Shown: in pieces, positions 1,035 through 53,139 of the stretch
How the letters are laid out: every line of letters starts with the position of its first letter
Position numbering within the stretch: position 1 is the first letter of the stretch
Assembly: GCF_023055435.1 (NCBI RefSeq)
Contig: NW_025963968.1
Span: 5,828,001 to 5,892,000 of the forward strand
Reading direction: 5' to 3'
Origin: Haliotis rufescens
Taxonomy: Eukaryota
DNA: 64,000 bases
Notes under the pieces: generated by a model
Told to the model about the DNA's origin: nothing
What the model saw: the letters and a program-made list of their open reading frames with translations, nothing else
Databases searched by the model: none
Program-made: the position numbers and the translations under genes

Positions 1035-1894
1035 ATGAGGACGGCTATAATTCTACCTGCTGCCATCCTGGCCTGTTTGTGTGTCATAAGTGATGCCCGT
1101 TACATTCGTAAGTATTGAAGTCAATCGCATCGTCATACTCATTACCCGGAGCAAAAAAATATGAAATTTATTGATGTCCCTCTGAGTCGTTTAACTACTC
1201 ATTACCTCTAGCAAATATTGGGTATTCTTCCTTATTCCTGACTGTTGACCTCCTATCATCAGTGTGTTTTAACAATGATTCGTTGATGGAAATCGTTATG
1301 ATTTTATTGTCTCCATCCTTCTGGACTTTCATGGGCCATACACACTATCATGCATACCTCTGAGGAACTGACGGCAGAGGACCAATATAGCTGTTAAACC
1401 GTTGGCTGTTCAATCTCAAAACTTTGTTTCCGACATTGAAACAATGTGGGACACCCTTTCTTTTGTGATCGTAGAAGTCATGTTGCCGAAAACGCCATAC
1501 TCACTCACTCTAATACCTAGGCGATTTAATTCCAGGTGCCTCAGGATTGCAAGTGCAGCCCAGGACTGTCAAAGGGTATGCCAACCAACAACCAAGGGTG
1601 ATTATCATCAACCAAGACAAACCTAGGCAGGCTGCACGGGTACCTACTGCTGCACGATCTGGATACGCACCACGACACGGCAACGGATACAACAACTTCC
1701 TCAACGACTACCTCCTTGCTGATGCCCTTGATATCAACCATCCCGGTCTATTGCACGGCTTCAACCAGATTGCCTCCCCTTACGCCCCCTCCGCCCGTAC
1801 AGGTAGAAACAGCTACGACCCTCTCTACGCTGCGCTCATCTTGGACCAGCTTGACGCTCAGCCAATTGGAGCCAGCTCCGCCATCGTTGGTTAG
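1035..1894 (+). CDS. Family A secreted protein, copy A1 (143 aa); CDS join(1035..1107,1536..1894)
   Basis: ATG at 1035 follows acceptor ttttacAG (1008-1009). The 73-nt coding part reads MRTAIILPAAILACLCVISDARYI (signal-peptide-like). Donor GTAAGT 1108; acceptor ttccAG 1534-35 joins in phase 1 to ORF 1547..1894. AATAAA at 2003. Non-coding exon 1 would lie just upstream of the window. Confidence 0.9.
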
Positions 1895-2329
1895 ATGATG
1901 TGCTTTTAACGAAAAATGTTTTCTCGGAGTGACATGAGACGGATTTTTTTGAGTTTTGAGTTTTTGAGATTATGCTTTTGTGTCATGGTTTCTGTCTAAT
2001 GAAATAAAATGTTTAATTGATTACCTTGCATTCATTGTTATCGATTGTTCCACCACACTCACTGTATCGGTATGGTCTTGAATGTATGTATACATATGTA
2101 TATTTATATGGCACTACTTGTAAATGGGGTGAGAATATTAAAGAGAATTTCATCGCACCGAACACATCATACGAACATACACTACACACTATGAATCACA
2201 CAGCACATTACACATTATACATTATACATTAAGGTCATACACTACAAGTTAAGTCAAAGCACGTGATGCAGGGAAGACATATGTACATATGCTCACACTT
2301 ATAGACATAGATATGTTCAGTGCATTGGT

Positions 2330-2333
<4 letters not shown>

Positions 2334-2395
<62 letters not shown>

Positions 2396-2410
2396 AGATA
2401 TACATATAGA
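2334..2410. repeat. (TA)n/(TAGATA)n microsatellite
   Basis: Direct reading; much shorter in the A2 copy. Confidence 0.95.
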
Positions 2411-2746
2411 TATGCCTATATTTTATTGACATTAGTGATAAATACTTTTCAATGGAAGGATATTCGCAGTTATATATTTATAAACATAATGTGCATATTC
2501 TATTTTCTCTACTTACATTGTGCCATTGAGTTAAGCTTAAACCGAGGTTTTCAGGTAATGATGGTATGGTTCAATGATTTGTAACTATTTAAACATAAAT
2601 AATAATGATAATAATAATAATAATAATAATAATAATTCTATAATACTACATATAATTCATTACACACCATGCATTGCACTTATATAATTACACACCATGC
2701 ATTACACTTATATAATTACCCACTCTTAATCACACTACCGCACTCT

Positions 2747-6204: not shown

Positions 6205-7064
6205 ATGAGGACGGCTATAATTCTACCTGCTGCCATCCTGGCCTGTTTGTGTGTCATAAGTGATGCCCGTTACATTCGTAAGTATTGAAGTCAATCGCAT
6301 CGTCATACTCATTACCCGGAGCAAAAAAATATGAAATTTATTGATGTCCCTCTGAGTCGTTTAACTACTCATTACCTCTAGCAAATATTGGGTATTCTTC
6401 CTTATTCCTGACTGTTGACCTCCTATCATCAGTGTGTTTTAACAATGATTCGTTGATGGAAATCGTTATGATTTTATTGTCTCCATCCTTCTGGACTTTC
6501 ATGGGCCATACACACCATCATGCATACCTCTGAGGAACTGACGGCAGAGGACCAATATAGCTGTTAAACCGTTGGCTGTTCAATCTCAAAACTTTGTTTC
6601 CGACATTGAAACAATGTGGGACACCCTTTCTTTTGTGATCGTAGAAGTCATGTTGCCGAAAACGCCATACTCACTCACTCTAATACCTAGGCGATTTAAT
6701 TCCAGGTGCCTCAGGATTGCAAGTGCAGCCCAGGACTGTCAAAGGGTATGCCAACCAACAACCCAGGGTGATTATCATCAACCAAGACAGACCTAGGCAG
6801 GCTGCACTGGTACCTACTGCTGCACGATCTGGATACGCACCACGACACGGCAACGGATACAACAACTTCCTCAACGACTACCTCCTTGCTGATGCCCTTG
6901 ATATCAACCATCCCGGTCTATTGCACGGCTTCAACCAGATTGCCTCCCCTTACGCCCCCTCCGCCCGTACAGGTAGAAACAGCTACGACCCTCTCTACGC
7001 TGCGCTCATCTTGGACCAGCTTGACGCTCAGCCAATTGGAGCCAGCTCCGCCATCGTTGGTTAG
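6205..7064 (+). CDS. Family A secreted protein, copy A2 (143 aa); join(6205..6277,6706..7064); non-coding exon 1 ~5108..5144
   Basis: Direct repeat of A1 offset by 5170 bp with the same splice sites. TATAAAA at 5076 and exon-1 donor CAG|GTGAGC at 5145. Differs from A1 by K>R, R>L and one silent change. Confidence 0.9.
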
Positions 7065-7624
7065 ATGATGTGCTTTTAACGAAACATGTTTTCTCGGAGT
7101 GACATGAGACGGAGTTTTTGAGTTTTGAGTTTTTGAGATTATGCTTTTGTGTCATGGTTTCTGTCTAATGAAATAAAATGTTTAATTGACTACCTTGCAT
7201 TCATTGTTATCGATTGTTCCACCACACTCACTGTATCGGTATGGTCTTGAATGTATGTATACATATGTATATTTATATCGCACTACTTGTAAATGGGGTG
7301 AGAATATTAAAGAGAATTTCATCGGATGGAACACATCATACAAACATACACTACACACTATGAATCACACAGCACATTACACATTATACATTATACATTA
7401 AGGTCATACACTACAAGTTAAGTCAATCTTACTCTCATAAATCAAAGCACGTGATGCAGGGAAGATATATGTACATATGCTCACACTTATAGACATAGAT
7501 ATGTTCAGTGCATTGGTATACATATATACATAGATATACATATAGATATGCCTATATTTTATTGACATTAGTGATAAATACTTTTCAATTGAAGGATATT
7601 CGCAGTAATATATTTATATACATA

Positions 7625-10600
7625 CCATACCATACACATACTTCATTACACACCATGCATTGCACTTAATTCATTACACACCCTGCATTACACATACTTC
7701 CTTACACACCATGCATTACACATACTTCCTTACACACCATGCATTACACATACTTCCTTACACACCATGCATTACACATACTTCCTTACACACCATGCAT
7801 TACACATACTTCCTTACACACCATGCATTACACATACTTCCTTATACACCATGCATTACACATACTTCCTTACACACCATGCATTACACATAATTCCTTA
7901 TACACCATCCATTACACATACTTCCTTATACACCATATAAGTCATTATGTGTAATGCATGGTGTGTAATGAATTTCGTGTAATGCATGGTGTGTAGTTAA
8001 TTATGTGTAATGCTTGGTGTGACATGAATTATATGTAATCCATGGTGTGTAATGAATTAAGTGTAATGCATGGTGTGTACTGAATTATGTGTAATGCACG
8101 GTGTGTAATGAATTATGTGGAATGCATGGTGTATAAGGAAGTATGTGAATGCTTTGTATATAATAAAGTATATGTAATCCATGGTGTGTAATGAAGTATG
8201 TGTAATGCATGGCGTGTAATGAATTATGTGTAATGCATGGTGTGTAGTGAATTAAGTTCAATGCATGGTGTGTAATGAATTATGTGTAATGCATGGTGTG
8301 TAATGAAGTATGTGTATGGCATGGTGTGTAATGAAATATGTGTAAATGCATGGTGTGTAATGAAGTATGTCCAGTGCATGGTGTGTAATGAATTATGTGT
8401 AATGCATGGTGTGTAATGAAATATGTGTATGGCATGGTGTGTAATGAATTATGTGTAATACATGGTGTGTAATAAAATATGTGTAATGCATGGCGTGTAA
8501 TTATATGAATGTTATGCATGGTGTTTAATGGTATAAGTGTAATGCATGGTTTTGTAGTGAATTATGTGTAATGCATGGTGGGTAATGAATTATGTGCAGT
8601 GCATGGTGTGTAATTATATGACTGTTATGCATGGTGTTTAATGATATAAGTGTAATGCATGGTGTGTAGTGAATTATGTGTTATGCATGGTGTTTAATGA
8701 TATAAGTGTAATGCATGGTGTGTAATGAATTATGTGCAGTGCATGGTGTGTAATGAATTATGTGTAATGCATGGTGTGTAATGAATTATGTGCAGTGCAT
8801 GATGTGTAATTATATGAATGTTATGCATGGTGTTTAATGATATAAGTGTAATGCATGGTGTGTAATGAATTATGTGTAATGCATGGTGTGTAATGAATTA
8901 TGTGTAATGCATGGTGTGTAGTGAATTATGTGTTATGCATGGTGTGTAATGAATTATGTGTAATGCATGGTGTGTAATGAATTATGTGTAATGCATGGTT
9001 TGTAATTATATAAGTGTTGTGCATTTGTGACACGTCATGCACTTCACATAATACAAAATGCACATTTCACCATACGCCAGATACCATATTTTACACATTA
9101 TGGACTACATGCCATGCATTAAACAGCATGTGCACCATGCACTACATTTCCCATCTCTCACAAACATTATCTTAACAGTTTTCCTGGAATGTGTATATAT
9201 AATATATATTACGTCAGAAGGTAAGTGATGTGTCAGTCGGACAGTGACAGCCAATATAGTTCCAACTGAAACCTTTTTCTTAGTTCACCAAAGGCTGATG
9301 GTTTGTTTGTTTGTTGTTTGACGCCGCACTCAACAATATTGCAGCTTTATGACGGCGGTGATCTAGTGTTTGACATCATTAGCATCGATCCACGCAGTTG
9401 GGATACGATGACATGCATCAACCAAGTCAGCGAGGCTGACCATCCGATCCCGTTAGTCGCCTCTTACGACAAGCATAGTCGCCTTTTACGGCAAGCATGG
9501 GTTCTGCCCCGCATCTTCATGGGTGCATGGTGTGTAATGCATTATGTGTAGTGCATGGTGTGTAATGAATTATGTGAAATGCATGGTGTATAATGAAGTA
9601 TGTGTAGTGCATGGTGTGTAATGAATAATGAGCAGTGCATGGTGTGTAGTGAATGTGTGATGCATGGTGTGTAATGAATTATGTGCAGTGCATGGTGTGT
9701 AATTATATGAATGTTATGCATGGTGTTTAATGATATAAGTGTAATGCATGGTGTGTAGTGAATTATGTGTTATGCATGGTGTGTAATGAATTATGTGTAA
9801 TGCATGGTGTGTAATGAATTATGTGTAATGCATGGTGTGTAATGAATTATGTGTAATGCATGGTGTGTAGTGAATTATGTGTTATGCATGGTGTGTAATG
9901 AATTATGTGTAATGCATGGTGTGTAATGAATTACGTGTAATGCATGGTGTGTAATGAATTATGTGTAATGCATGGTGTGTAGTGAATTATGTGTTATGCA
10001 TGGTGTGTAATGAATTATGTGTAATGCATGGTGTGTAATGAATTATGTGTAATGCATGGTGTGTAATTATATAAGTGTTGTGCATTTGTGACACGTCATG
10101 CACTTAACATTATACAAAATGCACATTCCACCATGCGCCAGATACCATATTTTACACATTATGGACTACATGCCATGCATTAAACAGCATGTGCACCATG
10201 CACTACATTTCCCATCTCTCACAAACATTATCTTAACAGTTTTCCTGGAATGTGTATATATAATATATATTACGTCAGAAGGTAAGTGATGTGTCAGTCG
10301 GACAGTGACAGCCAATATAGTTCCAACTGAAACCTTTTTCTTAGTTCACCAAAGGCTGATGGTTTGTTTGTTTGTTGTTTGACGCCGCACTCAACAATAT
10401 TGCAGCTTTATGACGGCGGTGATCTAGTGATTGACATCATTAGCATCGATCCACGCAGTTGGGATACGATGACATGCATCAACCAAGTCAGCGAGCCTGA
10501 CCATCCGATCCCGTAAGTCGCCTCTTACGACAAGCATAGTCGCCTTTTACGGCAAGCATGGGTTCTGCCCCGCATCTTCATGGGTGCATGGTGTGTAATG

Positions 10601-13460
10601 CATAATGTGTAGTGCATGGTGTGTAATGAATTATGTGAAATGCATGGTGTATAATGAAGTATGTGTAGTGCATGGTGTGTAATGAATAATGAGCAGTGCA
10701 TGGTGTGTAGTGAATGTGTGATGCATGGTGTGTAATGAATTATGTGCAGTGCATGGTGTGTAATGAATTATGTGTAATGCATGATGTATAATGAATTATG
10801 TGTAGTGCATGGTGTGTAATGAATTATGTGTAATGCATGGTGTGTAATTATATAAGTGTTGTGCATTTGTGACACGTCATGCACTTCACATTATACAAAA
10901 TGCACATTCCACCATACGCCAGATACCATATTTTACACATTATGGACTACATGCCATGCATTAAACAGCATGTGCACCATGCACTACATTTCCCATCTCT
11001 CACAAACATTATCTTAACAGTTTTCCTGGAATGTGTATATATAATATATATTACGTCAGAAGGTAAGTGATGTGTCAGTCGGACAGTGACAGCCAATATA
11101 GTTCCAACTGAAACCTTTTTCTTAGTTCACCAAAGGCTGATGGTTTGTTTGTTTGTTGTTTGACGCCGCACTCAACAATATTGCAGCTTTATGACGGCGG
11201 TGATCTAGTGATTGACATCATTAGCATCGATCCACGCAGTTGGGATACGATGACATGCATCAACCAAGTCAGCGAGGCTGACCATCCGATCCCGTTAGTC
11301 GCCTCTTACGACAAGCATAGTCGCCTTTTACGGCAAGCATGGGTTCTGCCCCGCATCTTCATGGGTGCATGGTGTGTAATGCATTATGTGTAGTGCATGG
11401 TGTGTAATGAATTATGTGAAATGCATGGTGTATAATGAAGTATGTGTAGTGCATGGTGTGTAATGAATAATGAGCAGTGCATGGTGTGTAGTGAATGTGT
11501 GATGCATGGTGTGTAATGAATTATGTGCAGTGCATGGTGTGTAATGAATTATGTGTAATGCATGATGTATAATGAATTATGTGTAGTGCATGGTGTATAA
11601 TGAATACTGTGCAATGCATGGTGTGTAGTGAATGTGTGATGCATGGTGTGTAATGCATTTTGTGTAGTGCATGGTGTGTAATGAATTATGTTAAATGCTT
11701 GGTGTGTAGTGAATGTGTGATGCATGGTGTGTAATGCATTATGTGTAGTGCATGGTGTATAATGAATAACAGTGCAGTGCATGATGTGTAGTGAATATGT
11801 GATGCATTATCTGTATTGCATTTTGTGTTATGATTATGCAGTGTATGATGGGTAGAGAATATGAAATACGTGGTGTGATGTATAATGCATGATGTGTAGT
11901 GCATTTCGTGTAATACATGATTGTAATGAAAGTTTTTGTACGGTGTGTAGTGCTTTGTTTGTAGTGCATACTTTGTAATTAATTACATATGTTGAATGGT
12001 GTGTAATTATTTATATATTATGCATGGCGTGTAATTAATTATATATATTATGCATGGTGTGTTATCAGTTATATATTATGCATGGTGTGTTATTAATTAT
12101 ATATTATGCATGGTGTGTAATTAATTATATATTAAGCAGGGTGTGTACTCAATTATATATGTTGGATGGTGTGTAATCAATTATATATTATGGATGGTGT
12201 GTAATTATTATATATTATGCATGGTGTGTAATTAATTATGTATTATGCATGGTGTGTAATCAATTATATATATATGCATGGTGTGTAATTTATTATATAT
12301 TATACCTCGTGTGTAATTAATCATATATTATGCATGGTGTGTAATCAATTATATATGTTGCATGGTGTGTTGTGCATGGTATGCAATTAATTATATATTA
12401 TGCATGGTGTGTAATCAATTATATATTATGCATGGTGTGTAATCAATTATATATTATTCATGGTGTGTTGTGCATGGTGTGTCGTGCATGTAAGTCATTA
12501 ATTATATATTATGCATGGTGTGTTGTGCATCGTGTGTCATGCATGTAAGTCATTAATCATATATTATGCATTGTGTGTTGTGCATGGTGTGTTGTGCATG
12601 GTGTGTCGTGCATGTAAGTCATTAATTATATATTTTGCATGGCGTGTTGTGCATGGTGTGTTGTGCATGGTGTGTCGTGCATGTAAGTCATTAATTATAT
12701 ATTTTGCATGGCGTGTTGTGCATGTGTGTCGTGCATGGTGTGTCGTGCATGTAAGTCATTAATTATATATTTTGCATGGTGTGTTGTGCATGGTGTGTTG
12801 TGCATGGTGTGTCGTGCATGTAAGTCATTAATCATAAATTATGCATTGTGTGTTGTGCATGGTGTGTTGTGCATGGTGAGTCGTGCATGTAAGTCATTAA
12901 TTATATATTTTGCATGGCGTGTTGTGCATGTGTGTCGTGCATGGTGTGTCGTGCATGTAAGTCATTAATTATATATTTTGCATGGCGTGTTGTGCATGTG
13001 TGTCGTGCATGGTGTGTCGTGCATGTAAGTCATTAATTATATATTTTGCATGGCGTGTTGTGCATGTGTGTCGTGCATGGTGTGTCGTGCATGTAAGTCA
13101 TTAATTATATATTTTGCATGGTGTGTTGTGCATGGTGTGTTGTGCATGGTGTGTCGTGCATGTAAGTCATTAATCATAAATTATGCATTGTGTGTTGTGC
13201 ATGGTGTGTTGTGCATGGTGAGTCGTGCATGTAAGTCATTAATTATATATTTTGCATGGCGTGTTGTGCATGTGTGTCGTGCATGGTGTGTCGTGCATGT
13301 AAGTCATTAATTATATATTTTGCATGGTGTGTTGTGCATGGTGTGTTGTGCATGGTGTGTCGTGCATGTAAGTCATTAATTATATATTTTGCATGGCGTG
13401 TAGATCAAAGCATGATTGGCTCCACGTTTCGTGCACGGTCCAAAGTGCATGGTGTGTAGT
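7625..13460. repeat. Satellite A (~28-bp TGCATGGTGTGTAATGAATTATGTGTAA, grading into a longer TGCATGGTGTGTCGTGCATGTAAGTCATTAATTATATATT variant)
   Basis: Tandem array; orientation flips at ~7940; related arrays at ~2650-2720 and ~19780-20990. Confidence 0.95.
9030..11367. repeat. Three copies of a ~500-bp cassette (unique segment plus short retroposon) embedded in satellite A
   Basis: Near-identical blocks starting ~9030, ~10090 and ~10870; duplicated ORFs 9303/11145 and 10098/10879. Confidence 0.9.
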
Positions 13461-13675: not shown

Positions 13676-14481
13676 CTAACCAACGATTGGCTGAGCGTCA
13701 AGTTGGTCCAAGATGAGCGCAGCGTAGAGAGGGTCGTAGCTGTTTCTACCTGTACGGGCGGAGGGGGCGTAAGGGGAGGCAATCTCGTTTAAGCCGTACG
13801 ATAGACCGGGATGGTTGATATCAAGGGCATCAGCAAGGAGGTAGTCGTTGAGGAAGTTGTTGTATCCGTTGCCGTGTCGTGGTGCGTATCCAGATCGTGC
13901 AGCAGTAGGTACCCGTGCAGCCTGCCTAGGTCTGTCTTGGTTGATGATAATCACCCTTGGTTGTTGGTTGGCATACCCTTTGACAGTCCTGGGCTGCACT
14001 TGCAATCCTGAAGCACCTGGAATTAAATCGCCTAGGTATTAGAGTGAGTGAGTATGGTTTACGACGTTTTCGGCAACATTGCAGCATTACTACTACGATC
14101 CCAACAAGAAAGGGTGTCCCACATTGTTCCCATGTCGGAATTTGAGTTTTGAGATCGAGCCAACGCTTTAACAGCTATACTGGTCATCTGTCGTCAGTTC
14201 CTCAGAGGTGTTCATGATGGTGTGTAGTCCCATAGGATGGAGACAATAAAATCTTAACAATTTCCATCAACGAATCATTGTTAAAACACACTGATGATAG
14301 GAGGTCGACAGTCGAAGAATACCCAATATTTGCCAGAGGTAATGTGTAGTTAAACGACGCTGAGGGACATTCATAAATTGTAAGACTGAATTCTCCTGAT
14401 ATACTTACGATTGTAACGGGCATCACTTATGACACACAAACAGACCAGGATGGCAGCAGGTAGAATTATAGCAGTCCTCAT
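13676..14481 (-). CDS. Family A secreted protein, copy A3 (137 aa); complement(join(13676..14016,14409..14481)); exon 1 ends 15057
   Basis: MRTAIILPAAILVCLCVISDARYN exon of 73 nt, GTAAGT donor, ttccAG acceptor, in frame with ORF 13676..14005. TATAAAA at 15119-15125 (-). Lacks the GASSAI hexapeptide of A1/A2. Confidence 0.9.
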
Positions 14482-19760: not shown

Positions 19761-19779
19761 ATGTGGTGTGATATATAAT

Positions 19780-21353: not shown

Positions 21354-22500
21354 CTAACCAACGATTGGCTGAGCGTCAAGTTGGTCCAAGATGAGCGCAG
21401 CGTAGAGAGGGTCGTAGCTGTTTCTACCTGTACGGGCGGAGGGGGCGTAAGGGGAGGCAATCTGGTTGAAGCCGTACGATAGACCGGGATGGTTGATATC
21501 AAGGGCATCAGCAAGGAGGTAGTCGTTGAGGAAGTTGTTGTATCCGTTGCCGTGTCGTGATGCGTATCCAGATCGTGCAGCAGTAGGTACCCGTGCAGCC
21601 TGCCTAGGTCTGTCTTGGTTGATGATAATCACCCTTGGTTGTTGGTTGGCATACCCTTTGACAGTCCTCGGCTGCGCTTGCAACCCTGAAGCACCTTGAA
21701 TGAAAATGTTAAGCTATTAGAGTGAGTGAGTATGGTTTACGGCGTTTTCGGCAACATTGCAGCATTACTACAACGATCCCAACTAGAAAGAGTGTCCCAC
21801 ATTGTTCCCATGTCGGAATTTGAATTTTGAGATCGAACCAACGCTTTAACAGCTATACCGGTCCTCTGTCGTCAGTTCCTCAGAGGTGTTCATGATGGTG
21901 TGTAGTGCCAATGTAAGTCCCATAGGATGGAGAAAATAAAATCATTACAATTTCCATAAAAAATGCACGATTCTTAAAGAAATTTCAAAATAGACTCTTG
22001 AACATCTGTGGAGACTGCGCTAACGATATGGGTGAATACAAATATTTGTTTATTATTTTGATCTTTTTGACCACCCCGAGGCTTGTGACAATGCACAATA
22101 TTTCAAGAATCTTTTCACCTGTTAAAATTCACAATATTAGGCTCAAAATAGGCGCTTGGACAACTTGGAGACTGCGCAAATGATATGGGGAATAAAAATA
22201 ACGTTTTTCGATTTTGAAAGATTTTTTACTTCTTAAAATACAAAATTTTAGGCTCAAATAGACTCTTGGACATACTGATGATAGGAGTTCAACAGTCAGG
22301 GATAAAGAAGAATACCCAATATTTGCCGGAGGTAATGTATAGTTTAACGACTCTGAGGGACATTCATGAAATGTATATTATTATTCCGGGTAACAAGTAT
22401 GACGATGCGATTGACTTCAATACTTACGAATGTAACGGGCATCACTTATGACACACAAACAGGCCAGGATGGCAGCAGGTAGAATTACAGCAGTCCTCAT
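21354..22500 (-). CDS. Family A secreted protein, copy A4 (137 aa); complement(join(21354..21694,22428..22500)); exon 1 ends 23160
   Basis: MRTAVILPAAILACLCVISDARYI 73-nt exon, GTAAGT donor, ttcaAG acceptor, in frame with ORF 21354..21683. TATAAAA at 23222-23228 (-). Confidence 0.9.
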
Positions 22501-26700: not shown

Positions 26701-27060
26701 AGGGTAGCAGTTATGATGTATGTATGTGCCTTTATGTGAGAAGGGTAGCAGATGATTGTGTGTATGTGCCTGTATGTGAGAAGGGTAGCAGATGATTGTG
26801 TGTCTGTTCCTGTATATGATAACGGTAGATAATTGTGTGTATGTTCCTGTATGTAAGAAGGATAGCAGATGATTGTGTGTATGTTCCTGTATTTAAGAAG
26901 GATAGCAGATGATTGTGTGTATGTTTCTCTATGTAAGAAGGGTAGCAGATGATTGTGTGTATGTGCCTGTATGTGAGAAAGGTAGCGATAATTGTCTGGT
27001 TTGTATGTTCCTGCATATAAGGGTAGCAGATAGCTGTTTGCGTATGACCCTGTATGTAAG
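23760..27060. repeat. Satellite B' (~40-bp GAAGGGTAGCAGATGATTGTGTGTATGTTCCTGTATGTAA)
   Basis: Tandem array, variant of satellite B, upstream of A4. Confidence 0.95.
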
Positions 27061-28075
27061 AAGATCATAGAAGAGCAAGTGAACACTTGCGTTGCCTTTG
27101 CATGTGTTTGTGATGGGTGCTGCGGGTGAGGCAGGATACACTCACCCTTTCGCGAACACATGGTATTTTCACTTTTTCATAGTGATCCATTAACACATGC
27201 TAATGATATAGTCGGAATCGTACAATGGACCTGCTTTCGGCATATATTTCTGATGATTATGGAAAGGGGTTTGTCGCTTTTACTTAAACATGGACGATAT
27301 GTACAGTCCTTTCCTGTTGCATTTCTTTACATTTCTCAATTCTTCTTTACAATTCTTTACATTTTTTTACGATTCGCATACAATCGACTCTGCTTATAGC
27401 AGAGATTTCCATTAAATATAGAAAGGATTTTGAGGCTGTTATTTATATATGAGCTTATTTTACAAATGCTAAAAAGAGTCCACTTGACATGCAGTACCAC
27501 TCAGAAATTGTTAAAAGCTTATTCTGTTATGCCTGTGTCCTAGATCTATACCTCGCTTGCAAAATCAGAGTAACATATTACCGTGTATTATACTTAATGA
27601 GCGATATTATGAAAAATCAAGATAAACAATTTTGGCTATTTCTTGGTGTAGGAAACTGTAGCTATTGTTTATATAATAAGATAATCAAATGAGTGCAGCT
27701 ACAAATTATAAATATATTTGTGGGTCCCTTTCTACAGTTTTAACCAATCAATACAAGCAGCAATCTAAGAAAAAATATTCTTGGGATTAGTTCGGGACAT
27801 AAAGACATCGAACATACCAGCGGACATATCCTGGTTATCTAAAGATGATATTTATTTAAACGTTCAATCAGCTCTGCTTTTGGAAAAAAAGACTTCACGG
27901 ATATGGAAAGTGTTTTGTTGCTTTTATTCAAAATTAAATCGAACCTTAGTGTACGGGACTGAGGTATCCAATTTGCTTATATTGAAAAGGTGCATTTTAT
28001 TTTATGTCATAAAGTATAAAGGAAAATATATGAAATACATTAGCATCAGGTAGTGTGGTATATTACCTTTATGTT

Positions 28076-28330
28076 TAGTGTTTATCGCCGCACTCACCAA
28101 TATTCAAGCAAAATGACAGCGGTCTGTAAATAATCGAGTCTGGACGAGACAATCCAGTGATTGATATCATGAGCATCGATCATCGCAATTGGGATACGAT
28201 GACATGCATCAACCAAGTCAGCGAGCCTGACCACCCGATTCTGTTAGTCGCCTCTTACGACAAGCATAGTCGCCTTTTACGGCAAGCATGTGTTGCTGAG
28301 GAACTATTCTACCCCGGGTCTTCACGGGTA
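28076..28330 (-). mobile_element. Short non-autonomous retroposon without tRNA head; copies 9301-9524, 10362-10586, 11143-11367 (-), partial 44140-44293 (+)
   Basis: 5' CCCGTGAAGACCCGGGGTAGAAT...TGCTTGTCGTAAGAGGCGACTAAC; its 3' tail AATATTG(C/T)TGAGTGCGGCG..AAAC(AAAC)n resembles that of the SINEs. Confidence 0.7.
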
Positions 28331-29560
28331 TGTAAGAACACACAATATGTAACTGTTTTGTAAGAACACACAATATTTACATGTATGTAAGAACACACAA
28401 TATGTACATGTATGTAAGAACACACAATATGTAACTGTATGTAAGAACACACAATATGTAACTGTATGTAAGAACACACAATATGTAACTGTATGTAAGA
28501 ACACACAATATGTAACTGTATGTAAGAACACACAATATGTCACTGTATGTAAGAACACACAATATGTAACTGTATGTAAGAACACACAATATGTAACTGT
28601 ATGTAAGAACACACAATATGTAACTGTATGTAAGAACACACATTATATAACTGTAAGAACATAAAATGTGTAACTGTATGTAAGAACACACAATACGTAA
28701 CTATGTAAGAACACACAATATGTAACTGAAAGTAACAACACACAAGATGTATGTAAGAAAACAAAATATGTAACTGAAAGTAACAACACACGAGATGTAA
28801 CTGTATGTAAGAACACACAAGATGTAACTGCATGTAACAACACACAAGATGTAATTGAATGTAAGAACACACAATATGTAACTGAAAGTAACAACACACA
28901 ATATGTAACTGTATGTAAGAACAATCAATATGTAACTGAAAGTAACAACACACAAGATGTAACTGTATGTAACAACACACCAGATGTGGCTGTATGTAAG
29001 AAAACAAAATGTGTAACTGTGTGTGAGAACACGCAATGTGTAACTGTATGTAAGAACACACAATATGTAACTGCATGTAACAACACACAAGATGTGGCTG
29101 TATGTAAGAACACATAAGATGTCACTGCATGTAACAACACACAAGATGTAACTGAATGTAAGAACACACAATATGTAACTGAAAGTAACAACACACAATA
29201 TGTAACTGTATGTAAGAACACACAATACGTAACTGAATGTAAGAACACACAATATGTAACTGTATGTAAGAACAATCAATATGTAACTGAAAGTAACAAC
29301 ACACAAGATGTAACTGTAGGTAACAACACACCAGATGTGGCTGTATGTAAGAAAACAAAATGTGTAACTGTGTGTGAGAACACGCAATGTGTAACTGTAT
29401 GTAAGAATATACAATATGTACATGAATGTAAGAACGCACAAGAAGTGGCACAATATGTAACTGTGAGAACATATAACATATAACTGCATGTAAGAATACA
29501 ATATGTGACTGTATGTAAGAACACAATATGTGACTATGCATAAATATACAATATGTGATT
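28330..29560. repeat. Satellite C (27-bp GTAACTGTATGTAAGAACACACAATAT)
   Basis: Tandem array; 9-aa periodicity in spurious ORFs. Confidence 0.95.
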
Positions 29561-30815: not shown

Positions 30816-33601
30816 CTATCCCGCGAGAGGCATAAGAGGTAAGTCAAGAGCCTCGCGGAGATAGAGGTCATAAGGATTGAACTGTTGTGAACCAGCGGGG
30901 TATGCTGCTGGTTCTACTGGTGGCTTTGGTGCTTGTTCTACTAGTGTTGTTGCTGCTGGTTCCGCTGCCTGTGTTGCTGCCGGAGTTGCTGCTGCGTCTG
31001 TTGCTGCCTTTGCTGCTGGTACTGCTTCCAGTACTGCTGGTTGTAGTGGTGGTTCTGCTGTCGGTGCTGATGCTGGTTCCGCTGCCAGTGCTGCTTCCTT
31101 GGGACTGTTAGCGACATTTGGTTTACCGGGAGCACCTGACGCTACGTGGCCAGGGAAGGGAGGAAGGTCCAGTGCCTCAGCGAGTTGAAGGGAGTATAAG
31201 CGATCAAACTTGTTTTGGTAACTTGCACCTTGAGCACCCTTCGAAAAGTAAGGCGCTTGGAAGGCAGACGTGGCAGCTGGAGACTGAGCTGCACCCCGGC
31301 TGGCAGGTGCTCCAAGAGTTTGAGCGAGCTGGTGCAAGTTCTGATGTCCACCATAGTGCGGAAGCTCCATTTCAGCGAGCATGCTGAGTCTCAACATTTT
31401 GTCGTAGTATCTGCCTTCAGGTCCAGCAGGGAAGAGACCAGATGCAAAACTTACCGGGGAGTTGGGTTCTGGAGCGGGTACCTGTGGTGAGGCTCCTGTC
31501 TTAGTTGCTGGAACCGGGAATGAGGAAGAAGCGGTGGCAGAGACTACGTTTGAAGCAGGGGCTGGAGCGAGAGGGGCTTGAGCCTGGACAGGAACGGAAA
31601 CAGGGGTAGGCGCATCGATTGCGCTTGAAGCAGGGGCTGAGACGAGAGGGGCTTGAGCCTGGGCAGGGGCGGAAGCAGCACGAGCATTAGGGTAGTCCTC
31701 CTTGATGATAATGATAGTATTATGGGGGAAGGGTTGGTGTCTAGGTGTGTTCCTGCCGTATCCTTGCTCGATCTGGGACCCGTAGTAATCAGGTTGGCCA
31801 TTGGCAATGACATACTGAGGCTGTGTGTTTGGAGGGTTCTCATACACCGTGGGTTGGACTCTTGAGGGACCAGAGGGCGTGACTATGGGGGTATATGTCG
31901 GAGCTTGGGGAGAGACCTTTTGAGGTCGTGGAGCTGGGGGATAGACATTATTTTGAGCTCTTGGAGCTGGTGGATAGACGTTTTGAGCTCTTGGAGCTGG
32001 GGGATAGACATTATTTTGAGCTCTTGGAGCTGGTGGATAGACAATTTGAGCTCTTGGAGTTGGGGGATAAACGTTTTGAGCTCTTGGAGCTGGGGGGTAG
32101 ACGGTTTCAGCTCTTGGAGCTGGGGGATAGACATTTTGAGCTCTTGGAGCTGGGGGATAGACATTTTGAGCTCTTGGAGTTGGGGGATAGACATTTTGAG
32201 CTCTTGGAGCTGGGGGGTAGACAGTTTCAGCTCTTGGAGCTGGGAGATAGACATTTTGAGCTCTTGGAGCTGGGGGATAGACATTTTGAGCTCTTGGAGT
32301 TGGGGGATAGACATTTTGAGCTCTTGGAGCTGGGGGGTAGACAGTTTCAGCTCTTGGAGCTGGGGGATAGACATTTTGAGCCCTTGGAGCTGGGGGATAG
32401 ACATTTTGAGCCCTTGGAGCTGGAGGATAGACATTTTGAGCTCTTGGAGCTGGGGGATAGACATTTTGAGCTCTTGAAGCTTGGGGATAGACGTTTCGAG
32501 CTCTTGGAGCTGGTGGATAGACGTTTTGAGGTCGTGGAGCTGAGGGATAGACGGTTTGAGCCCGTTGAGCTTGTGGTGCTGGGGGATATACTTTCTGATT
32601 TGGTGCAACTGGTTGGGTTTTTCGAGTAAGGGCAACGGGCCTAACTTGAGTGGACTTGATGACGTTTCTTCGGAGTGTTTCAGTTGGGTGGTATATAATC
32701 TGACTTTCTAAATTTTCGCGTCTGGGATTTACTAAATTGTAAGAGTTGACTCCAGATTTTGAACCTGGAAGAAAACCAAAATGCTATATTAACACAAGCG
32801 GCAAACCCTTTCCAAAATCATACAAATCTCTGCTGAAAGCAGAGTCCATTGTATGTTTATGAATCACTGTCAAATTGTGATAATACCAGGTGTTCGTGAA
32901 GGGTTTAGCGTACCCTGCTCCACCGGGGGAACCCGTTGTCACTTTAACTGTGTATTTGACAGATAATTAAATGCAAATGTTAATACTACTAAATCTTCTG
33001 AGAACATTAAATTTTCTCCGTGACCTGCTCGCACACACACAAGACGGTTACAGCTGGCCCACACAATGATGAGTGAGGGAGTGAGTGAGTATGGTTTTAC
33101 GCCGCTTTTAGCAATATTCCAGTAATATTCTGGGACACCAGAAATGAGCTCCACACATTGTACCCATGTCGGGAATCGAACCCGGGTCTTCGGCGTGACG
33201 AGCGAACGCTTTAACCACTAGGCTACCCGACCGCCACCACACAATGATGAAAATTCTTAATCGACTCGAAAAAATATAGGAAAACTTAATTATAGTTATA
33301 TATTGACATGCTTACCCATTTCAAAAGCATCGCTCAGAGAGTGATTGAGTGAGTGAGTGAGATGGGTTTAAAGCCGCTTTGAACGGGACTTAGACAGATG
33401 TATGGCAACAGCATTAAGCATTCCATCGTATGCCAGCTGGATATATGGGCAACTCAGGAAACTGTATGCTCTTGAAGACACGTATTATGTCAGACTCTGT
33501 TATGTTACCTCCATATCAACGTACTTACCAATTACGAAAGCGTCGCTCAAAAGACAGCAACAGCCTAGTACGGCCATGGCCAAGAGCATGGTGGCTCTCA
33601 T
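30816..33601 (-). CDS. Family B secreted Pro/Ala/Gln-rich repeat protein B1 (673 aa); complement(join(30816..32764,33529..33601)); probable non-coding exon 1 ending 35644
   Basis: 73-nt exon MRATMLLAMAVLGCCCLLSDAFVI, donor GTAAGT, acceptor ttccAG. The frame is open from 32762 through about 22 NVYPPAPRAQ decapeptides into ORF 30816..31847, whose GTG start is internal. Carries three L-[AR]-E-[AM]-L-[DE]-L-P-like motifs. Confidence 0.88.
33073..33237 (-). mobile_element. tRNA-SINE family 1 in B1 intron 2 (others 44991-45153, partial ~41752-41870)
   Basis: A/B boxes, (CTCA)n tail, 13-bp TSD CACACAATGATGA. Confidence 0.85.
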
Positions 33602-33788: not shown

Positions 33789-33824
<36 letters not shown>

Positions 33825-34394: not shown

Positions 34395-34479
34395 TTTTTC
34401 AAGGAGAAGCTATCATAACGATCACTGCATCTGTGCAAAGAACCCTGCAGCAAACCTGCAGAATCCTTCTCTTGAATAA

Positions 34480-36228: not shown

Positions 36229-36392
36229 NNNNNNNNNNNNNNNNNNNNNNNNNNNNNNNNNNNNNNNNNNNNNNNNNNNNNNNNNNNNNNNNNNNNNNNN
36301 NNNNNNNNNNNNNNNNNNNNNNNNNNNNNNNNNNNNNNNNNNNNNNNNNNNNNNNNNNNNNNNNNNNNNNNNNNNNNNNNNNNNNNNNNNNN
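36229..36392. other. Assembly gap (164 N)
   Basis: Run of n. The flanks match 33750-33772 and 33898-34085, where the intervening sequence is a compound microsatellite. Confidence 1.
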
Positions 36393-38489: not shown

Positions 38490-41400
38490 CAGTACTATGT
38501 ATTGTATGAGTCGTGTCTACAGCTGTAGGTATTGTATATGTAGTGAGTCATGTTTACAGCTATAGGTATTGTACATGTAGTGAGTCGTGTATACAGCTAT
38601 AGGTAATGTACATGCAGTGAGTCGTGTATACAGCTATAGGTATTGTACATGTAGTGAGTCGTGTGTACAGCTATAGGTATTGTACATGTAGTGAGTCGTG
38701 TATACAGCTATTGGTAGTGTACATGTAGTGAGTCGTGTATACAGCTATAGGTATTGTACATGTAGTGAGTCGTGTATACTGCTATAGGTATTGTACATGT
38801 AGTGAGTCGTGTATACAGCTATAGGTATTGTACATTTAGTGAGTCGTATGTACAGCTATAGGCATTGTACATGCAGTGAGTCGTGTATACAGCTATAGGT
38901 AGTGTACATGTGGTGAGTGGTGTATACAGCTATAGTTATTGTACATGTAGTGAGTCGTGTATACAGCTATAGTCATTGTACATGTAGTGAGTCGTGTATA
39001 CAGCTATTGGTAGTGTACATGTAGTGAGTCGTGTATACAGCTATAGGTATTTACATGTAGTGAGTCGTGTATACAGCTATTGGTATTGTACATGTAATGA
39101 GTCGTGTATACAGCTATAGGTAATGTACATGTAGTGAGTCGTGTATACAGCTATTGGTATTGTACATGTAGTGAGTCGTGTATACAGCTATAGGTATTTA
39201 CATGTAGTGAGTCGTGTATACAGCTAAAGGTATTGTACATGTAGTGAGTCGTGTATACAGCTATAGGTATTGTACATGTAGTGAGTCGTGTAAACAGCTA
39301 TAGGTTTTGTACATGTAGTGAGTCGTGTATACAGCTATAGGTATTGTACATGTAGTGAGACGTGTATACAGCTATAGGTATTGTACATGTAGTGAGTCGT
39401 GTATACAGCTATAGGTATTGTACATGTTGTGAGTCGTGTGTACAGCTATAGGTATTGTACATGTAGTGAGTCGTGTATACAGCTATAGGTATTATAGATA
39501 CAGCTATGGGTATTTTACATGTAGTGAGTCGTGTTTACAGCTATAGGTATTGTGCATGTAGTGAGTCGTGTATACAGCTATTGGTATTGTACATGTAGTG
39601 AGTCGTGTATACAGCTATAGGTATTTACATGTAGTGAGTCGTGTATACAGCTAAAGGTATTGTACATGTAGTGAGTCGTGTATACAGCTATAGGTATTGT
39701 ACATGTAGTGAGTCGTGTAAACAGCTATAGGTTTTGTACATGTAGTGAGTCGTGTATACAGCTATAGGTATTGTACATGTAGTGAAACGTGTATACAGCT
39801 ATAGGTATTGTACATGTAGTGAGTCGTGTATACAGCTATAGGTATTGTACATGTTGTGAGTCGTGTGTACAGCTATAGATATTGTACATGTAGTGAGTCG
39901 TGTATACAGCTATAGGTATTATAGATACAGCTATGGGTATTTTACATGTAGTGAGTCGTGTTTACAGCTATAGGTATTGTGCATGTAGTGAGTCGTGTAT
40001 ACAGCTCTAGGTATTGTACATGTAGTGAGTCGTGTATACTGCTATAGGTATTGTACATGTAGTGAGTCGTGTATACTGCTATAGGTATTGTACATGTAGT
40101 GAGTCGTGTAAACAGCTATAGATATTGTACATTTAGTTAGTCGTGTATACAGCTATAGGCATTGTACATGTAGTGAGTCGTGTATACAGCTATAGGTAGT
40201 GTACATGTAGTGAGTCGTGTATACAGCTATAGTTATTGTACATGTAGTGAGTCGTGTATACAGCTATAGTCATTGTACATGTAGTGAGTCGTGTGTACAG
40301 CTATAGGTCTTTACATTTAGTGAGTCGTGTATACAGCTATAGTCATTGTACAGGTAGTGAGTCGTGTATACAGCTATAGGTATTGTACATGTAGTGAGTC
40401 GTGTATACAGCTATTGATACAGTATATGTAGTGAGTCGTGTAAACAGCTATAGGTATTGTACATGTAGTGAGTCGTGTATACAGCTATAGGTATTGTACA
40501 TGTAGTGAGTCGTGTATACAGCTATATGTATTGTACATGTAGTGAGTCGTGTATACAGCTATAGGTATTGTACATTTAGTGAGTCGTGTATACAGCTATT
40601 GATATAGTATATGTAGTGAGTCGTGTATACAGCTATAGTCATTGTACATGTAGTGAGTCGTGTGTACAGCTATAGGTCTTTACATGTAGTGAGTCGTGTA
40701 TACAGCTATATTGTACATTTAGTGAGTCGTGTATACAGCTATAGTCATTGTACAGGTAGTGAGTCGTGTATACAGCTATAGGTATTGTACATGTAGTGAG
40801 TCTTGTATACAGCTATGGGTATTGTACATGTAGTGAGTCGTGTATACAGCTATTGATATAGTATATGTAGTGAGTCGTGTATAAAACTATAGGTATTGTA
40901 CATGTAGTGAGTCGTGTATACAGCTATAGGTATTGTACATGTAGTGAAACGTGTATACAGCTATAGGTATTGTACATGTAGTGAGTCGTGTATACAGCTA
41001 TAGGTATTGTACATGTAGTGAGTCGTGTATACAGCTATTGATATAGTATATGTAGTGAGTCGTGTATACAGCTATAGTCATTGTACATGTAGTGAGTCAT
41101 GTGTACAGCTATAGGTCTTTACATGTAGTGAGTCGTGTATACAGCTATATTGTACATTTAGTGAGTCGTGTATACAGCTATAGTTATTGTACATGTAGTG
41201 CGACGTGTATACAGCTATAGTCATTGTACATGTAGTGAGTCATGTGTACAGCTATAGGTCTTTACATGTAGTGAGTCGTGTATACAGCTAAATTGTACAT
41301 GTAGTGAGTCGTGTGTACAGCTATAGGTCTTTACATGTAGTGAGTCGTGTATACAGCTATATTGTACATGTAGTGAGTCGTGTGTACAGCTATAGTTATT

Positions 41401-41710
41401 GTACATGTAGTGCGACGTGTATACAGCTATAGGTATTGTACATGTAGTGAGTCGTGTATACAGCTATAGGTATTGTACATGTAGTGAGTCGTGTATACAG
41501 CTATATGTATTGTACATGTAGTGAGTCGTGTATACAGCTATAGATATTGTACATGTAGTGAGTCGTGTATACAGCTATTGATATAGTATATGTAGTGAGT
41601 CGTGTATACAGCTATAGGTATTGTACATGTAGTGAATCGTGTATACACCTATTGATATAGTATATGTAGTGAGTCGTGTATACAGCTATAGGTATTGTAC
41701 ATGTAGTGAG
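38490..41710. repeat. Satellite D (37-bp TGTACATGTAGTGAGTCGTGTATACAGCTATAGGTAT)
   Basis: Tandem array of roughly 85 units. Confidence 0.97.
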
Positions 41711-42322
41711 TATCATTTGGGGCGCGTATACAGCTTGAAATGGGGAAAGCGTGAGTGAGTGCATGGGTTGGATTCTACGCTGCTTTTAGCAAGATTCCAG
41801 CAATATCACGACAGGGTACATCAGAAATGGGTTCACGCAGTGTACCCATGTGGGGATCAAACCCATGCCTTTTGGAGTTATATCAGCACGCACCAACTCA
41901 GCATGAAGCCCTAAGTGACGTACGTCTCCATTGTTTCCCGCTTGGGTGACACCCACAATCAAGGGGATGGTTGAGAAAAGCCTTGAAACAATCGGGGTGA
42001 GTCTGGGATTTCAATCCTCGACAACATATAAGTATATTTGTTTAGTTGATGACATATATAATACCATCACAGTGACCTCGAACGCTACATACGCCAACAG
42101 AAATTCCACCTTGAGTTGTAGATGTACAGATAAACAAATATTTTCTTTTGTTCATAGTGCTTTTATTGTCAGAAACAACACCAACGATGACCTTATGACA
42201 TGTCAACCTCTGAACAAATAATTAATACAGATGCATCTATCTGAGACGTATCTGAACCAATCATCCTGAGCTAACTTGTCGAAAGCTGAAGCATCGACCA
42301 GTCATGTGAAGGCAAGATCACA

Positions 42323-43970
42323 TCACACGCGAGGCACAGAGGGCTTGGGGGGTAGGTCAAGAGCCTCTCGGAGATGCATGGAGTAGAGGTCATGAGGGCT
42401 GTAACCATGGGGACCTCCAGCTGGTTTAGCTGCTGGTGATGCTGCCTGTTCTGCTGTTGGTTTTGGTGCTGCTGGGTGGCCTTGTTGTGGAGGAAGGTCT
42501 AGTGCCTCAGCGAGGTGCAGTGAGAACAAGCGGTCGTACTGGTTCTGGTGACCAAGGGAAGAGGACTTGGAAGCTTGATACTGAGCCGCACCCTTGCTGG
42601 CAGGTGCTCCAAGGGTTTCAGCGAGCTGGTGCAAGTTGTGATGTCCTCCATAGTGAGGAAGCTCCATTTCAGCGAGCATGTTGAGTCTCAACATGTTGTT
42701 GAGGGCGTCGTATCCACGTTGGGAAGCACCAGGGTAGAGGCCAGATGCAGCCCCTGCTGGAGAGTTGGGTTCTGGGATGGGAACCCGTGGGGAGGCTGCT
42801 GTTTTAGCTGGCGCAGATGCTGGGTCAGCCAATGGATTCGCAGGGGAGCGGGAAAAAGGGTCTGCTGAGAAAGGGGCAGGGAAAGGGTCTGCAAAGTTGG
42901 GGCCAGTGGCAGAGAAAGGGCCTAAAGAGATCTGGGAAGGGGAAGGGGCAAATGGGGCTTGAGCCTGGTCAGGGGCGGAAGCACCACGGGGATTAGGGGA
43001 GTCCTCTTTGATGATGATGATAGTATTCTGGGGAAAGGGTTGGTGTCTGAGTGTGTTTCTGCTGGAAGCGCGGATAGGCTGAGTGTCGTATCCTTGCTCG
43101 GTCTGGGAACCGTAGTGATCAGGTAGGCCATTGGCAACGACATACTGGGGCTGTGGAGCTGGGACATAGACTTTTTGAGCTTGTTGGGCTGGGGGATAGA
43201 CGTTTTGAGTTTGTGGGGCTGGGGGATAGACTTTCTGAGCTTGTGGGGCTGGGGGATAGACGTTCTGAGCTTGTGGGGCTGGGGGATAGACTCTCTGAGT
43301 TTGTGGGGCTGGGGGATAGACTTTTTGAGTTTGAGGGCCTCGGGGGTAGACGTTTTGAGTTTGTGGGGCAAGGGGATAGACATTTTGAGTTTGTGGGGCT
43401 GGAGGGTAGACATTTTGAGTTTGTGGGGCTGGAGGGTAGACTTTTTGAGTTTGTGGGGCTTGTGGGGTTGGTCGAGCAGGAGCCACCTGTTTGACTTGAG
43501 TGGACTTGATGGCTTTTCTTTGGAGTGTTTTAGTGGGATTGTAGATAATCTGTCTTCCAAATCTTGGGGTTTGGACCCTGCGATTTATCAGCTGATTGTA
43601 AGGATTGATAATATATGGTGAACCTGCAAGAAAACCAAAAGTCCATTTAAATACAAGCGACGAAACCCTTTTCCATATGGGTCCGACATTTTGATATTCC
43701 CCTTTTGGGTGAGTGAGTGAGTGAGTGAGTGAGTGAGTGAGTGAGTGAGTGAGTGAGTTGGGTTTAAAGCCGCTTTGAACGGAACTCAGACAGTATCATG
43801 GCCACATCATGAAGCAGTTCCGTCGCATGCCAGCTGGATCTATGGACAACTCAGGAAACAGTATGCTCTTGATGACACATGTTAGGAATGTACGTACCAA
43901 TAACGAAAGCGTCGGTCACAAGACAGCAACATCCTAGTACGGCCATGGCCAACATGATGACGGCTCTCAT
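42323..43970 (-). CDS. Family B secreted Pro/Ala/Gln-rich repeat protein B2 (457 aa); complement(join(42323..43623,43898..43970)); exon 1 ends 45221
   Basis: 73-nt exon MRAVIMLAMAVLGCCCLVTDAFVI, donor GTACGT, acceptor tgcAG, in frame with ORF 42323..43486. Ten QNVYPPAPQT-type repeats. Clear paralog of B1 (shared QPQYV.ANG.PD.YGSQ, MLRL.MLAEMELPHYGGH.NLHQLA). TATATAAA at 45289-45296 (-). Confidence 0.9.
43708..43758. repeat. (GAGT)n microsatellite (expanded SINE tail remnant) in B2 intron 2
   Basis: Direct reading; shorter homolog at ~33347-33360 in B1. Confidence 0.9.
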
Positions 43971-53110: not shown

Positions 53111-53139
53111 TCTATAGTATATGTCAGAAGAGGTTCATA

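What the first reader, a model, noticed from the sequence alone, without database searches (positions are those of the whole stretch)
1680..42720. Novel repeated motif Y-D-x-L-(Y)-x3-L-x-[ED]-A-L-D-L-P unites families A and B
Seen: A has YNNFLNDYLLADALDINHPG and SYDPLYAALILDQLDAQP. B1 has YYDKMLRLSMLAEMELPHYG, KFDRLYSLQLAEALDLPPFPG and PYDLYLREALDLPLMP. B2 has LNNMLRLNMLAEMELPHYG, QYDRLFSLHLAEALDLPP and HDLYSMHLREALDLPP. So there are 2 copies in A and 3 in B, conserved while the Pro/Ala linkers diverge freely. Inference: a short acidic amphipathic helix acting as a multivalent 'sticker' between disordered spacers (self-assembly, partner or mineral binding).
Basis: partly seen in the sequence, partly recalled or inferred. 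Interest (0 to 1): 0.82.

Follow-up and report, generated by a model that had tools for sequence, protein, structure and literature searches.

The report
Abalone-only secreted protein family, helical motifs
The shared motif is real, but it marks common descent: the short (A) and long (B) proteins are paralogues of one abalone-only, tandemly amplified family of abundant, secreted, mostly disordered proteins whose short helix-prone acidic segments are kept by selection, and whose function is still untested.

Summary
The window is Haliotis rufescens (red abalone). All eight quoted peptides sit at the stated places: four A genes and two B genes, each intact. The assembly gap (36229-36392) lies between B1 and B2 and touches no exon.

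A and B are paralogues, and the motif is only one of their shared features:
- the same 73-nt signal-peptide exon;
- the same phase-1 intron inside codon 25;
- a second conserved box (VIIINQD / TIIIIKED);
- a collinear m1-linker-m2 module (0 of 2000 shuffles reach the observed score).

Support differs by motif copy. B's m2 and m3 are clear duplicates (z 10.9). The link of m1 to m2/m3 is only suggestive (P about 0.015). A's two copies are not significantly alike on their own.

In the oldest B pairs, m2 and m3 have dN/dS 0.09-0.24, while the m2-m3 linker has about 1 plus many indels. AlphaFold2 puts helices on the motifs at low confidence. Amphipathicity is not supported.

A profile search of the genome finds 13 copies, all in one ~85-kb locus. 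A search of 1.84 billion protein representatives finds no relative outside Haliotis. RNA contigs show spliced, very abundant transcripts; the tissue is unknown.

The sticker function remains inference. The scan noted this motif before on adjacent DNA (s1-813688).

The parts
1035..1894 (+). Gene A1 (143 aa, identical to NCBI model P0006). Exon 1 is 1035-1107 (signal peptide), the intron is 1108-1535, exon 2 is 1536-1894. Box VIIINQD 1598-1618; m1 1688-1747; m2 1811-1864.
   Evidence: GTAAGT..AG splice sites, no internal stop
6205..7064 (+). Gene A2 (143 aa). Exon 1 is 6205-6277, exon 2 is 6706-7064. Box 6768-6788; m1 6858-6917; m2 6981-7034.
13676..14481 (-). Gene A3 (137 aa). Exon 1 is 14409-14481, exon 2 is 13676-14016. 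Box 13934-13954; m1 13805-13864; m2 13688-13741.
21354..22500 (-). Gene A4 (137 aa). Exon 1 is 22428-22500, exon 2 is 21354-21694. Box 21612-21632; m1 21483-21542; m2 21366-21419.
30816..33601 (-). Gene B1 (673 aa). Exon 1 is 33529-33601 (signal peptide), the intron is 32765-33528, exon 2 is 30816-32764. A 30-nt (decapeptide ..VYPPAPRAQN..) array of about 22 units lies at 31900-32561. Box TIIIIKED 31695-31718; m1 31350-31409; m2 31149-31211; m3 30828-30875.
36229..36392 (.). Assembly gap (N). It is intergenic, between B1 and B2, and lies in no exon or motif. It could hide further sequence, so the copy count here is a lower bound.
42323..43970 (-). Gene B2 (457 aa, identical to NCBI model P0001). 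Exon 1 is 43898-43970, the intron is 43624-43897, exon 2 is 42323-43623. The decapeptide array (about 10 units) lies at 43152-43460. Box TIIIIKED 43001-43024; m1 42647-42703; m2 42488-42541; m3 42347-42394. The transcript 3' end is near 42150-42220.

Best explanation
SHOWN. A and B are paralogous members of one Haliotis-restricted, two-exon gene family. It is amplified in a single ~85-kb locus holding 9 A and 4 B genes. The genes encode abundant, secreted, Cys-free, mostly disordered proteins. The quoted 'motif' is the set of short helix-prone segments (m1, m2, and m3 in B), each ending in a Pro or Asn-His-Pro stop. These segments are the main acidic patches of otherwise basic chains, which carry a basic N-terminal half and an acidic, motif-bearing C-terminal half. 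m3 arose by duplication of m2; m1 is probably an older copy. m2 and m3 are under purifying selection at the protein level, while the Pro/Ala linkers change neutrally and by insertions and deletions.

INFERRED. The helices are interaction modules (folding-upon-binding 'stickers'). They would let the bivalent A and trivalent B chains associate with each other, or with the basic regions of the same family, to build or condense an extracellular material of the abalone: a mantle or shell-associated matrix, periostracum, or mucus/adhesive. The second conserved box (IIIxxD, a beta-prone hydrophobic run flanked by charges) may be a further contact site.
For: Organism and homologues: (only H. rufescens, H. 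cracherodii, H. rubra and H. asinina; all named 'uncharacterized' or given low-complexity misnomers).

Paralogy:
- collinear A-B alignment, z 7.6, 0/2000 shuffles, and signal peptides z 10.1;
- the MAFFT alignment pairs m1 with m1, the linker (H.G..H...Q.A....AP.A..G) and m2 with m2;
- identical exon 1 length and phase-1 intron in codon 25 in all six genes;
- no A-B nucleotide similarity in coding DNA, so gene conversion does not explain the likeness.

One locus only: 13 profile matches in the 1.33-Gb genome, all at C190:5787979-5870739.

Selection (B1 vs B2/B3): m2 and m3 have dN/dS 0.09-0.24 at pS 0.42-0.52, while the m2-m3 linker has dN/dS 1.0-1.1 with 46-61 indel columns. A 25-residue m1 block and the box core are invariant between H. 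rufescens and H. asinina A proteins that are otherwise about 60% identical.

Helices: AlphaFold2 places helices at B2 C-part residues 7-25, 67-79 and 115-126 (m1, m2, m3) and at A residues 77-92 and 120-131 (m1, m2). The rest is coil, with pTM 0.18-0.19.

Charge blocks and absence of Cys in the mature chains.

Expression: in runs X1 and X2, contigs cover the exons only, with k-mer depth up to about 44,000 and zero depth in the intron. X2 has an exon1-exon2 joint.

Neighbourhood: a GAAP-like Gly/Ala/Asn/Arg-rich ORF lies at 62064-63074. It fits the published description of the mantle-expressed shell protein HasCL10contig2 (PMC2989941).
Against: - No binding, assembly or location data exist.
- The tissue is unknown, because run labels are coded.
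- The motif strings are absent from the held supplementary files of the H. laevigata shell proteome and from all searchable papers.
- The helix models have low confidence (pLDDT about 45-70).
- The helical hydrophobic moment is not above shuffles.
- The relation of m1 to m2/m3 is only suggestive (P 0.015).
- The m1 module among B paralogues has low pS as well as low pN, so part of its identity may come from gene conversion.
- The codon counts per motif are small (16-19).
Confidence: 0.6

Rival explanations
1. The helices are docking sites for a different partner and not for each other. Candidates are a basic matrix protein such as the neighbouring Arg/Ala-rich GAAP-like protein, chitin, or a calcium carbonate surface via the Asp/Glu residues.
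For: Each motif carries net charge -1 to -4 in an otherwise basic protein. A GAAP-like basic ORF lies 18 kb away. Conserved Tyr/Phe-Asp starts and Asp/Glu positions are kept across species.
Against: The motif peptides are not found in the held H. laevigata shell proteome supplements. The acidity is modest compared with Asp-rich mineral binders. Gene neighbourhood alone is weak evidence. The GAAP-like identity could not be confirmed by sequence search.
Confidence: 0.2
2. The motifs act inside the secretory cell. They would be pH- or Ca2+-dependent condensation or sorting helices that pack very abundant cargo into secretory granules, as amphipathic helices do in granins and prohormone convertases. 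In this case the material properties would reside elsewhere, for example in the Tyr-Pro-Pro repeats.
For: Transcript abundance is very high. The proteins have a signal peptide. Acidic helix-prone segments with several His nearby (HYGGHH; His counts) could respond to pH.
Against: No direct evidence exists. The hydrophobic moment is not raised. A proteins lack the repeat domain yet keep the motifs, so the motifs appear to be the core of the family.
Confidence: 0.1
3. The motif has no function of its own. The likeness is a relic of common descent, kept similar by recent duplication and gene conversion among tandem copies.
For: A copies are 94-99% identical. The m1 module among B paralogues has low pS (0.02-0.17). 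Within-protein m1 vs m2 similarity is weak.
Against: m2 and m3 keep their residues while synonymous sites are about 45-50% changed (dN/dS 0.09-0.24). The 25-aa m1 block is invariant between H. rufescens and H. asinina A proteins of about 60% identity. A and B share no nucleotide similarity in coding DNA.
Confidence: 0.07

Closest known systems
Mussel foot protein Mfp-1 ('adhesive plaque matrix protein', the automatic NCBI name given to B2)
   Same: Both are secreted, basic and Pro-rich, and both carry tandem decapeptides containing Tyr-Pro-Pro (B1 about 22 units, B2 about 10 units).
   Different: There is no sequence homology: no Pfam hit and no hit outside Haliotis. The repeats lack the Lys of AKPSYPPTYK. 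A proteins have no repeats at all. The conserved helical motifs and the IIIxxD box have no counterpart in Mfp-1 (this last point is from my own knowledge of Mfp-1).
Repetitive low-complexity-domain (RLCD) proteins of mollusc mantle secretomes, e.g. GAAP/HasCL10contig2 of Haliotis (PMC2989941, PMC6003135)
   Same: Both are taxon-restricted, signal-peptide bearing, disordered and compositionally biased. Both are highly expressed and evolve fast by repeat gain and loss. A GAAP-like gene lies in the same window.
   Different: The A/B family was not found among the shell proteins in the held supplements. Its defining feature is a set of non-repetitive conserved blocks (box, m1-m3), not the low-complexity repeats.
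Sticker-and-spacer disordered proteins, such as tropoelastin (alternating Ala-rich helical cross-linking domains and Pro-rich spacers)
   Same: Both alternate short helix-prone conserved segments with variable Pro/Ala-rich spacers and have a multivalent architecture (2 or 3 segments per chain).
   Different: This is an analogy only. The abalone helices carry Asp/Glu/Tyr and no Lys. No cross-linking or phase separation has been shown.

Membership tests
Mfp-1 / adhesive plaque matrix protein | Tandem decapeptide of the AKPSYPPTYK type, with Lys and Tyr (DOPA) in each unit | tested here: not met
   The B units read ..VYPPAP[RQ][AT]QN... Only the YPP triplet is shared and Lys is mostly absent. A proteins have no such repeats.
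Mfp-1 / adhesive plaque matrix protein | Detectable sequence homology to mussel foot proteins | tested here: not met
   The profile search of 1.84e9 representatives used the C-terminal module only and gave only Haliotis A/B proteins plus one false hit. The word search with B2, scored on residues 250-490, returned Haliotis only. The repeat domain itself was not used as a query.
Any Pfam-A family | Match above the gathering threshold | tested here: not met
   There are no families for A and B1. B2 has one chance-level hit at E 0.22, 12.4 bits against a cut-off of 27.8. PDB sequence profiles find nothing.
Haliotis shell matrix proteome (RLCD shell proteins) | Peptides or sequences identified in shell extracts | tested here: not met
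   Twelve motif, box and repeat strings conserved across Haliotis are absent from the 28 held supplementary files of PMC6003135. Long files were cut when stored, so this is weak negative evidence.
Haliotis shell matrix proteome (RLCD shell proteins) | Expression in mantle epithelium | not testable with these tools
   RNA runs hold abundant spliced transcripts, but sample and tissue labels are coded.
New A/B family (this locus) | A 25-codon signal-peptide exon, a phase-1 intron, the IIIxxD box, and m1-linker-m2 in that order | tested here: met
   All six genes of the window meet this. So do the three genes read upstream: B3 and B4 with signal-peptide exons nearby, and one A gene. The H. asinina, H. 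rubra and H. cracherodii proteins show the same order of blocks.

The most novel reading that the evidence does not exclude
The m1-m3 helices are a previously undescribed, genus-specific sticker module. In this reading, bivalent A chains (nine gene copies) cross-link trivalent B chains by helix-helix or acidic-helix/basic-block contacts. This would drive coacervation or gelation of an abundant abalone secretion (periostracum, shell-associated matrix or pedal adhesive), giving a compact natural sticker-spacer system that could be tested with peptides.
Probability: 0.15. Interest if true: 0.6.

Novelty: new member of a known kind. Interest (0 to 1): 0.35.

Why it matters
Mollusc secretomes are full of lineage-restricted disordered proteins whose working parts are unknown. 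In this family the working parts can be pointed to: a few short blocks under purifying selection, set in freely changing spacers, in very abundant transcripts from a tandemly amplified locus next to a GAAP-like gene. That makes peptide-level and knock-down tests feasible in an aquaculture species. As it stands, it is an uncharacterised orphan family with a plausible but unproven role.

Tried and rejected
- Pfam scan: nothing.
- ESM Atlas: only sub-threshold look-alikes for A and no usable hit for the B C-part.
- PDB sequence profiles: nothing.
- P0014, the only non-Haliotis hit of the big profile search, is a translated tandem satellite from an unnamed ENA contig, so it is a false positive.
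- Complex prediction (B2 C-part with the A m1-m2 module): 'no answer', score 0.00. This is not evidence either way.
I could therefore not read the orthologous loci of H. asinina and H. rubra, test synteny, or compute cross-species dN/dS.
- Word search with the GAAP-like ORF: no hit at E <= 0.001, flooded by low-complexity candidates.
- Literature searches for motif strings, LOC numbers, XP accessions and the automatic names: no paper. One call was malformed.
- A narrow m2/m3 HMM barely detects m1 or the A motifs (p 0.02-0.13).
- Neuropeptide or prohormone reading rejected: no dibasic sites flank the motifs.
- Fold searches were not run, because both models are low-confidence.
Exon 2 was searched by reference, and full-length proteins were those the database returned (P0001, P0006). 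Exons were joined only inside a local script to check frames.
Full report
**What is there**

The window is Haliotis rufescens, contig C190:5828001-5892000. The A pair occurs four times, twice on each strand. The B triplets occur once each in two genes on the minus strand.

The only N run (36229-36392) lies between the ATG of B1 (33601) and the 3' end of B2 (about 42150). It is in no exon and breaks no frame that matters here. It could hide extra sequence, so the copy count in the window is a lower bound.

**Gene models**

Each of the six genes has the same structure:
- a 73-nt first coding exon that encodes the signal peptide;
- a GT..AG intron inside codon 25 (phase 1);
- one large second exon that runs to the stop, with no internal stop.

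The joined translations equal the NCBI models P0006 (A, 143 aa) and P0001 (B2, 457 aa). Exons were joined only in a local script to check frames.

**A and B are paralogues**

- The mature A protein aligns collinearly with the C-terminal part of B. No shuffle out of 2000 reached the observed score (z 7.6). The signal peptides are also alike (z 10.1).
- MAFFT pairs A m1 with B m1, the inter-motif linker with its B counterpart, and A m2 with B m2.
- A second conserved block precedes the motifs in both families..QQPRVIIINQD.. in A (IIIKED in H. asinina) and ..QPFPxNTIIIIKED.. in B.
- A and B share no nucleotide similarity in coding DNA. The only shared DNA is a 173-nt repeat element upstream of A1 and inside the B1 intron. 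The protein likeness is therefore old and is not due to gene conversion.

The motif is one of several inherited blocks. It is not a device that joins two unrelated families.

**Is the motif a repeat?**

- B m2 and m3 are clear duplicates (z 10.9), and both are present in H. rubra and H. cracherodii.
- A m2 matches B m2 without gaps (z 5.9).
- m1 is more distant. A m1 resembles both B m1 and B m2 (each z 3.2, about 0.012 of shuffles). A profile-profile comparison of all m1 with all m2/m3 instances gives P 0.015, in register up to the closing D-L-P.
- Inside one protein, m1 vs m2 is not significant (z 1.0-1.8).
- A narrow m2/m3 HMM detects m1 and the A motifs only at p 0.02-0.13.

I read this as one sure duplication (m2 to m3) and one probable older duplication (m1/m2).

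**Selection**

The oldest B pairs are B1 vs B2 and B1 vs B3. Regional values:

| Region | dN/dS | pN | pS | Indel columns |
|---|---|---|---|---|
| m2 and m3 | 0.09-0.24 | 0.055-0.134 | 0.42-0.52 | 0-3 |
| m2-m3 linker | 1.0-1.1 | 0.30-0.32 | 0.28-0.32 | 46-61 |
| Ala/Pro/DPF linker | 0.64-0.71 | 0.28-0.35 | 0.39-0.44 | 19-29 |
| m1 module | 0.46-0.61 | 0.07-0.11 | 0.15-0.17 | 2 |

The m1 module has low pN but also low pS, so conversion among B copies may contribute there. The counts per motif are small (16-19 codons).

Between the H. rufescens and H. asinina A proteins, which are about 60% identical overall, a 25-residue block around m1 and the core of the box are invariant. m2 keeps its pattern (aromatic-D-P-x-Y-A ... 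D-x-hydrophobic-D-A-Q-P) while its hydrophobic residues change.

**Structure**

- AlphaFold2 on the B2 C-terminal part puts helices on m1 (7-25), a short linker segment (35-42), m2 (67-79) and m3 (115-126). Everything else is coil, with mean pLDDT 52.6 and pTM 0.18.
- On A it puts helices on m1 (77-92) and m2 (120-131), with mean pLDDT 46 and pTM 0.19.
- This fits helix-prone segments in a disordered chain, at low confidence.
- The helical hydrophobic moment of the motifs is not higher than in shuffled versions, so 'amphipathic' is not supported.
- The mature chains have no Cys and are rich in Pro and Ala (A and B), with Gln also high in B. The H. rufescens proteins are basic overall (pI 8.9-9.8). 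They have a basic N-terminal half and an acidic, motif-bearing C-terminal half.

**Distribution**

- A profile of the m1-to-end module finds 13 places in the 1.33-Gb genome, all within C190:5787979-5870739: 4 B genes and 9 A genes. Seven of the A genes lie in the same orientation, and six of these are spaced about 5.17 kb apart.
- The same profile, run against 1.84 billion protein representatives, returns only the Haliotis A and B clusters and one false hit, a translated satellite.
- Word searches find orthologues in H. cracherodii, H. rubra and H. asinina only. All are named 'uncharacterized' or carry low-complexity misnomers.
- Pfam, PDB sequences and the ESM Atlas give nothing.
- No searchable paper contains the motif strings, the LOC numbers or the accessions.

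**Expression**

In two runs of different species labels (X1, X2), contigs cover the B2 exons only. Summed k-mer depth reaches about 44,000, and depth is zero in the intron and beyond the 3' end. X2 holds a contig that joins exon 1 to exon 2. X15 covers the intron as well and is DNA. The B genes are therefore spliced and very abundant in some samples. Sample labels are coded, so the tissue is unknown.

**Function**

What is shown: a secreted, abundant, disordered, tandemly amplified family with a few selected helix-prone acidic blocks.

What is inferred: these blocks are interaction modules that let bivalent A and trivalent B chains associate, possibly with the basic halves of the same proteins, to form or condense an extracellular material.

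A GAAP-like ORF at 62064-63074 fits the published description of the mantle-expressed shell protein HasCL10contig2. This hints at a mantle secretome neighbourhood, but a sequence search could not confirm the identity.

Against a major shell-matrix role, twelve conserved strings are absent from the held supplements of the H. laevigata shell proteome.

**Earlier notes of the scan**

Note s1-813688 recorded a 'repeated acidic-hydrophobic motif shared by long and short proteins' 39.5 kb upstream. I read that DNA: it holds B4, B3 and further A copies of the same family. The scan has therefore seen this motif before on adjacent DNA.

**Verdict**

Its statistical support is strong for A-B homology and for m2/m3, and only suggestive for m1. 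This is an uncharacterised orphan family of a familiar kind, of moderate interest.

Noticed in passing
window 62064-63074 (-): A 336-aa ORF rich in Gly/Ala/Asn/Ser/Arg, with GGSGGNGGFGG-type and GNG repeats and Ala/Arg/Ser blocks. It matches the published description of the Haliotis shell protein GAAP (HasCL10contig2, PMC2989941). A word search gave no hit at E <= 0.001, so the identity is unconfirmed.
   Followed up: partly
window 7619-13401, 15663-16389, 18508-20988, 23764-27063, 28328-29558, 38503-41711, 48060-48338, 57159-58290: Large satellite arrays with periods of 28, 37, 40, 43 and 55-69 nt fill most of the space between the A and B genes. The 37-nt family recurs at 38503, 48060 and 57159. 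Many long 'ORFs' here are translated satellites.
   Followed up: no
window 431-603 (upstream of A1) and about 33076-33243 (B1 intron): A 173-nt element that is 88% identical sits upstream of A1 and inside the B1 intron. It is probably a dispersed repeat, and it recalls note s1-813777 on intron sequence shared between genes of this region.
   Followed up: partly
window 49331-56756 (-): ORFs with reverse-transcriptase-like sequences (..FLDNEKAFDRVW....ADDTTL..) suggest two decayed non-LTR retrotransposon copies.
   Followed up: no
window 44146-44200: Summed k-mer depth is extremely high in all four runs, reaching millions in the DNA run. This indicates a highly repeated element just upstream of B2.
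   Followed up: no
G000:C190:5787379-5788482 (+) and window 30816-33601 (-): B4 (an open frame of 565 aa) and B1 (673 aa) look intact, but neither was returned as an annotated protein by the word search that found B2 and B3. They may be unannotated or modelled differently.
   Followed up: no
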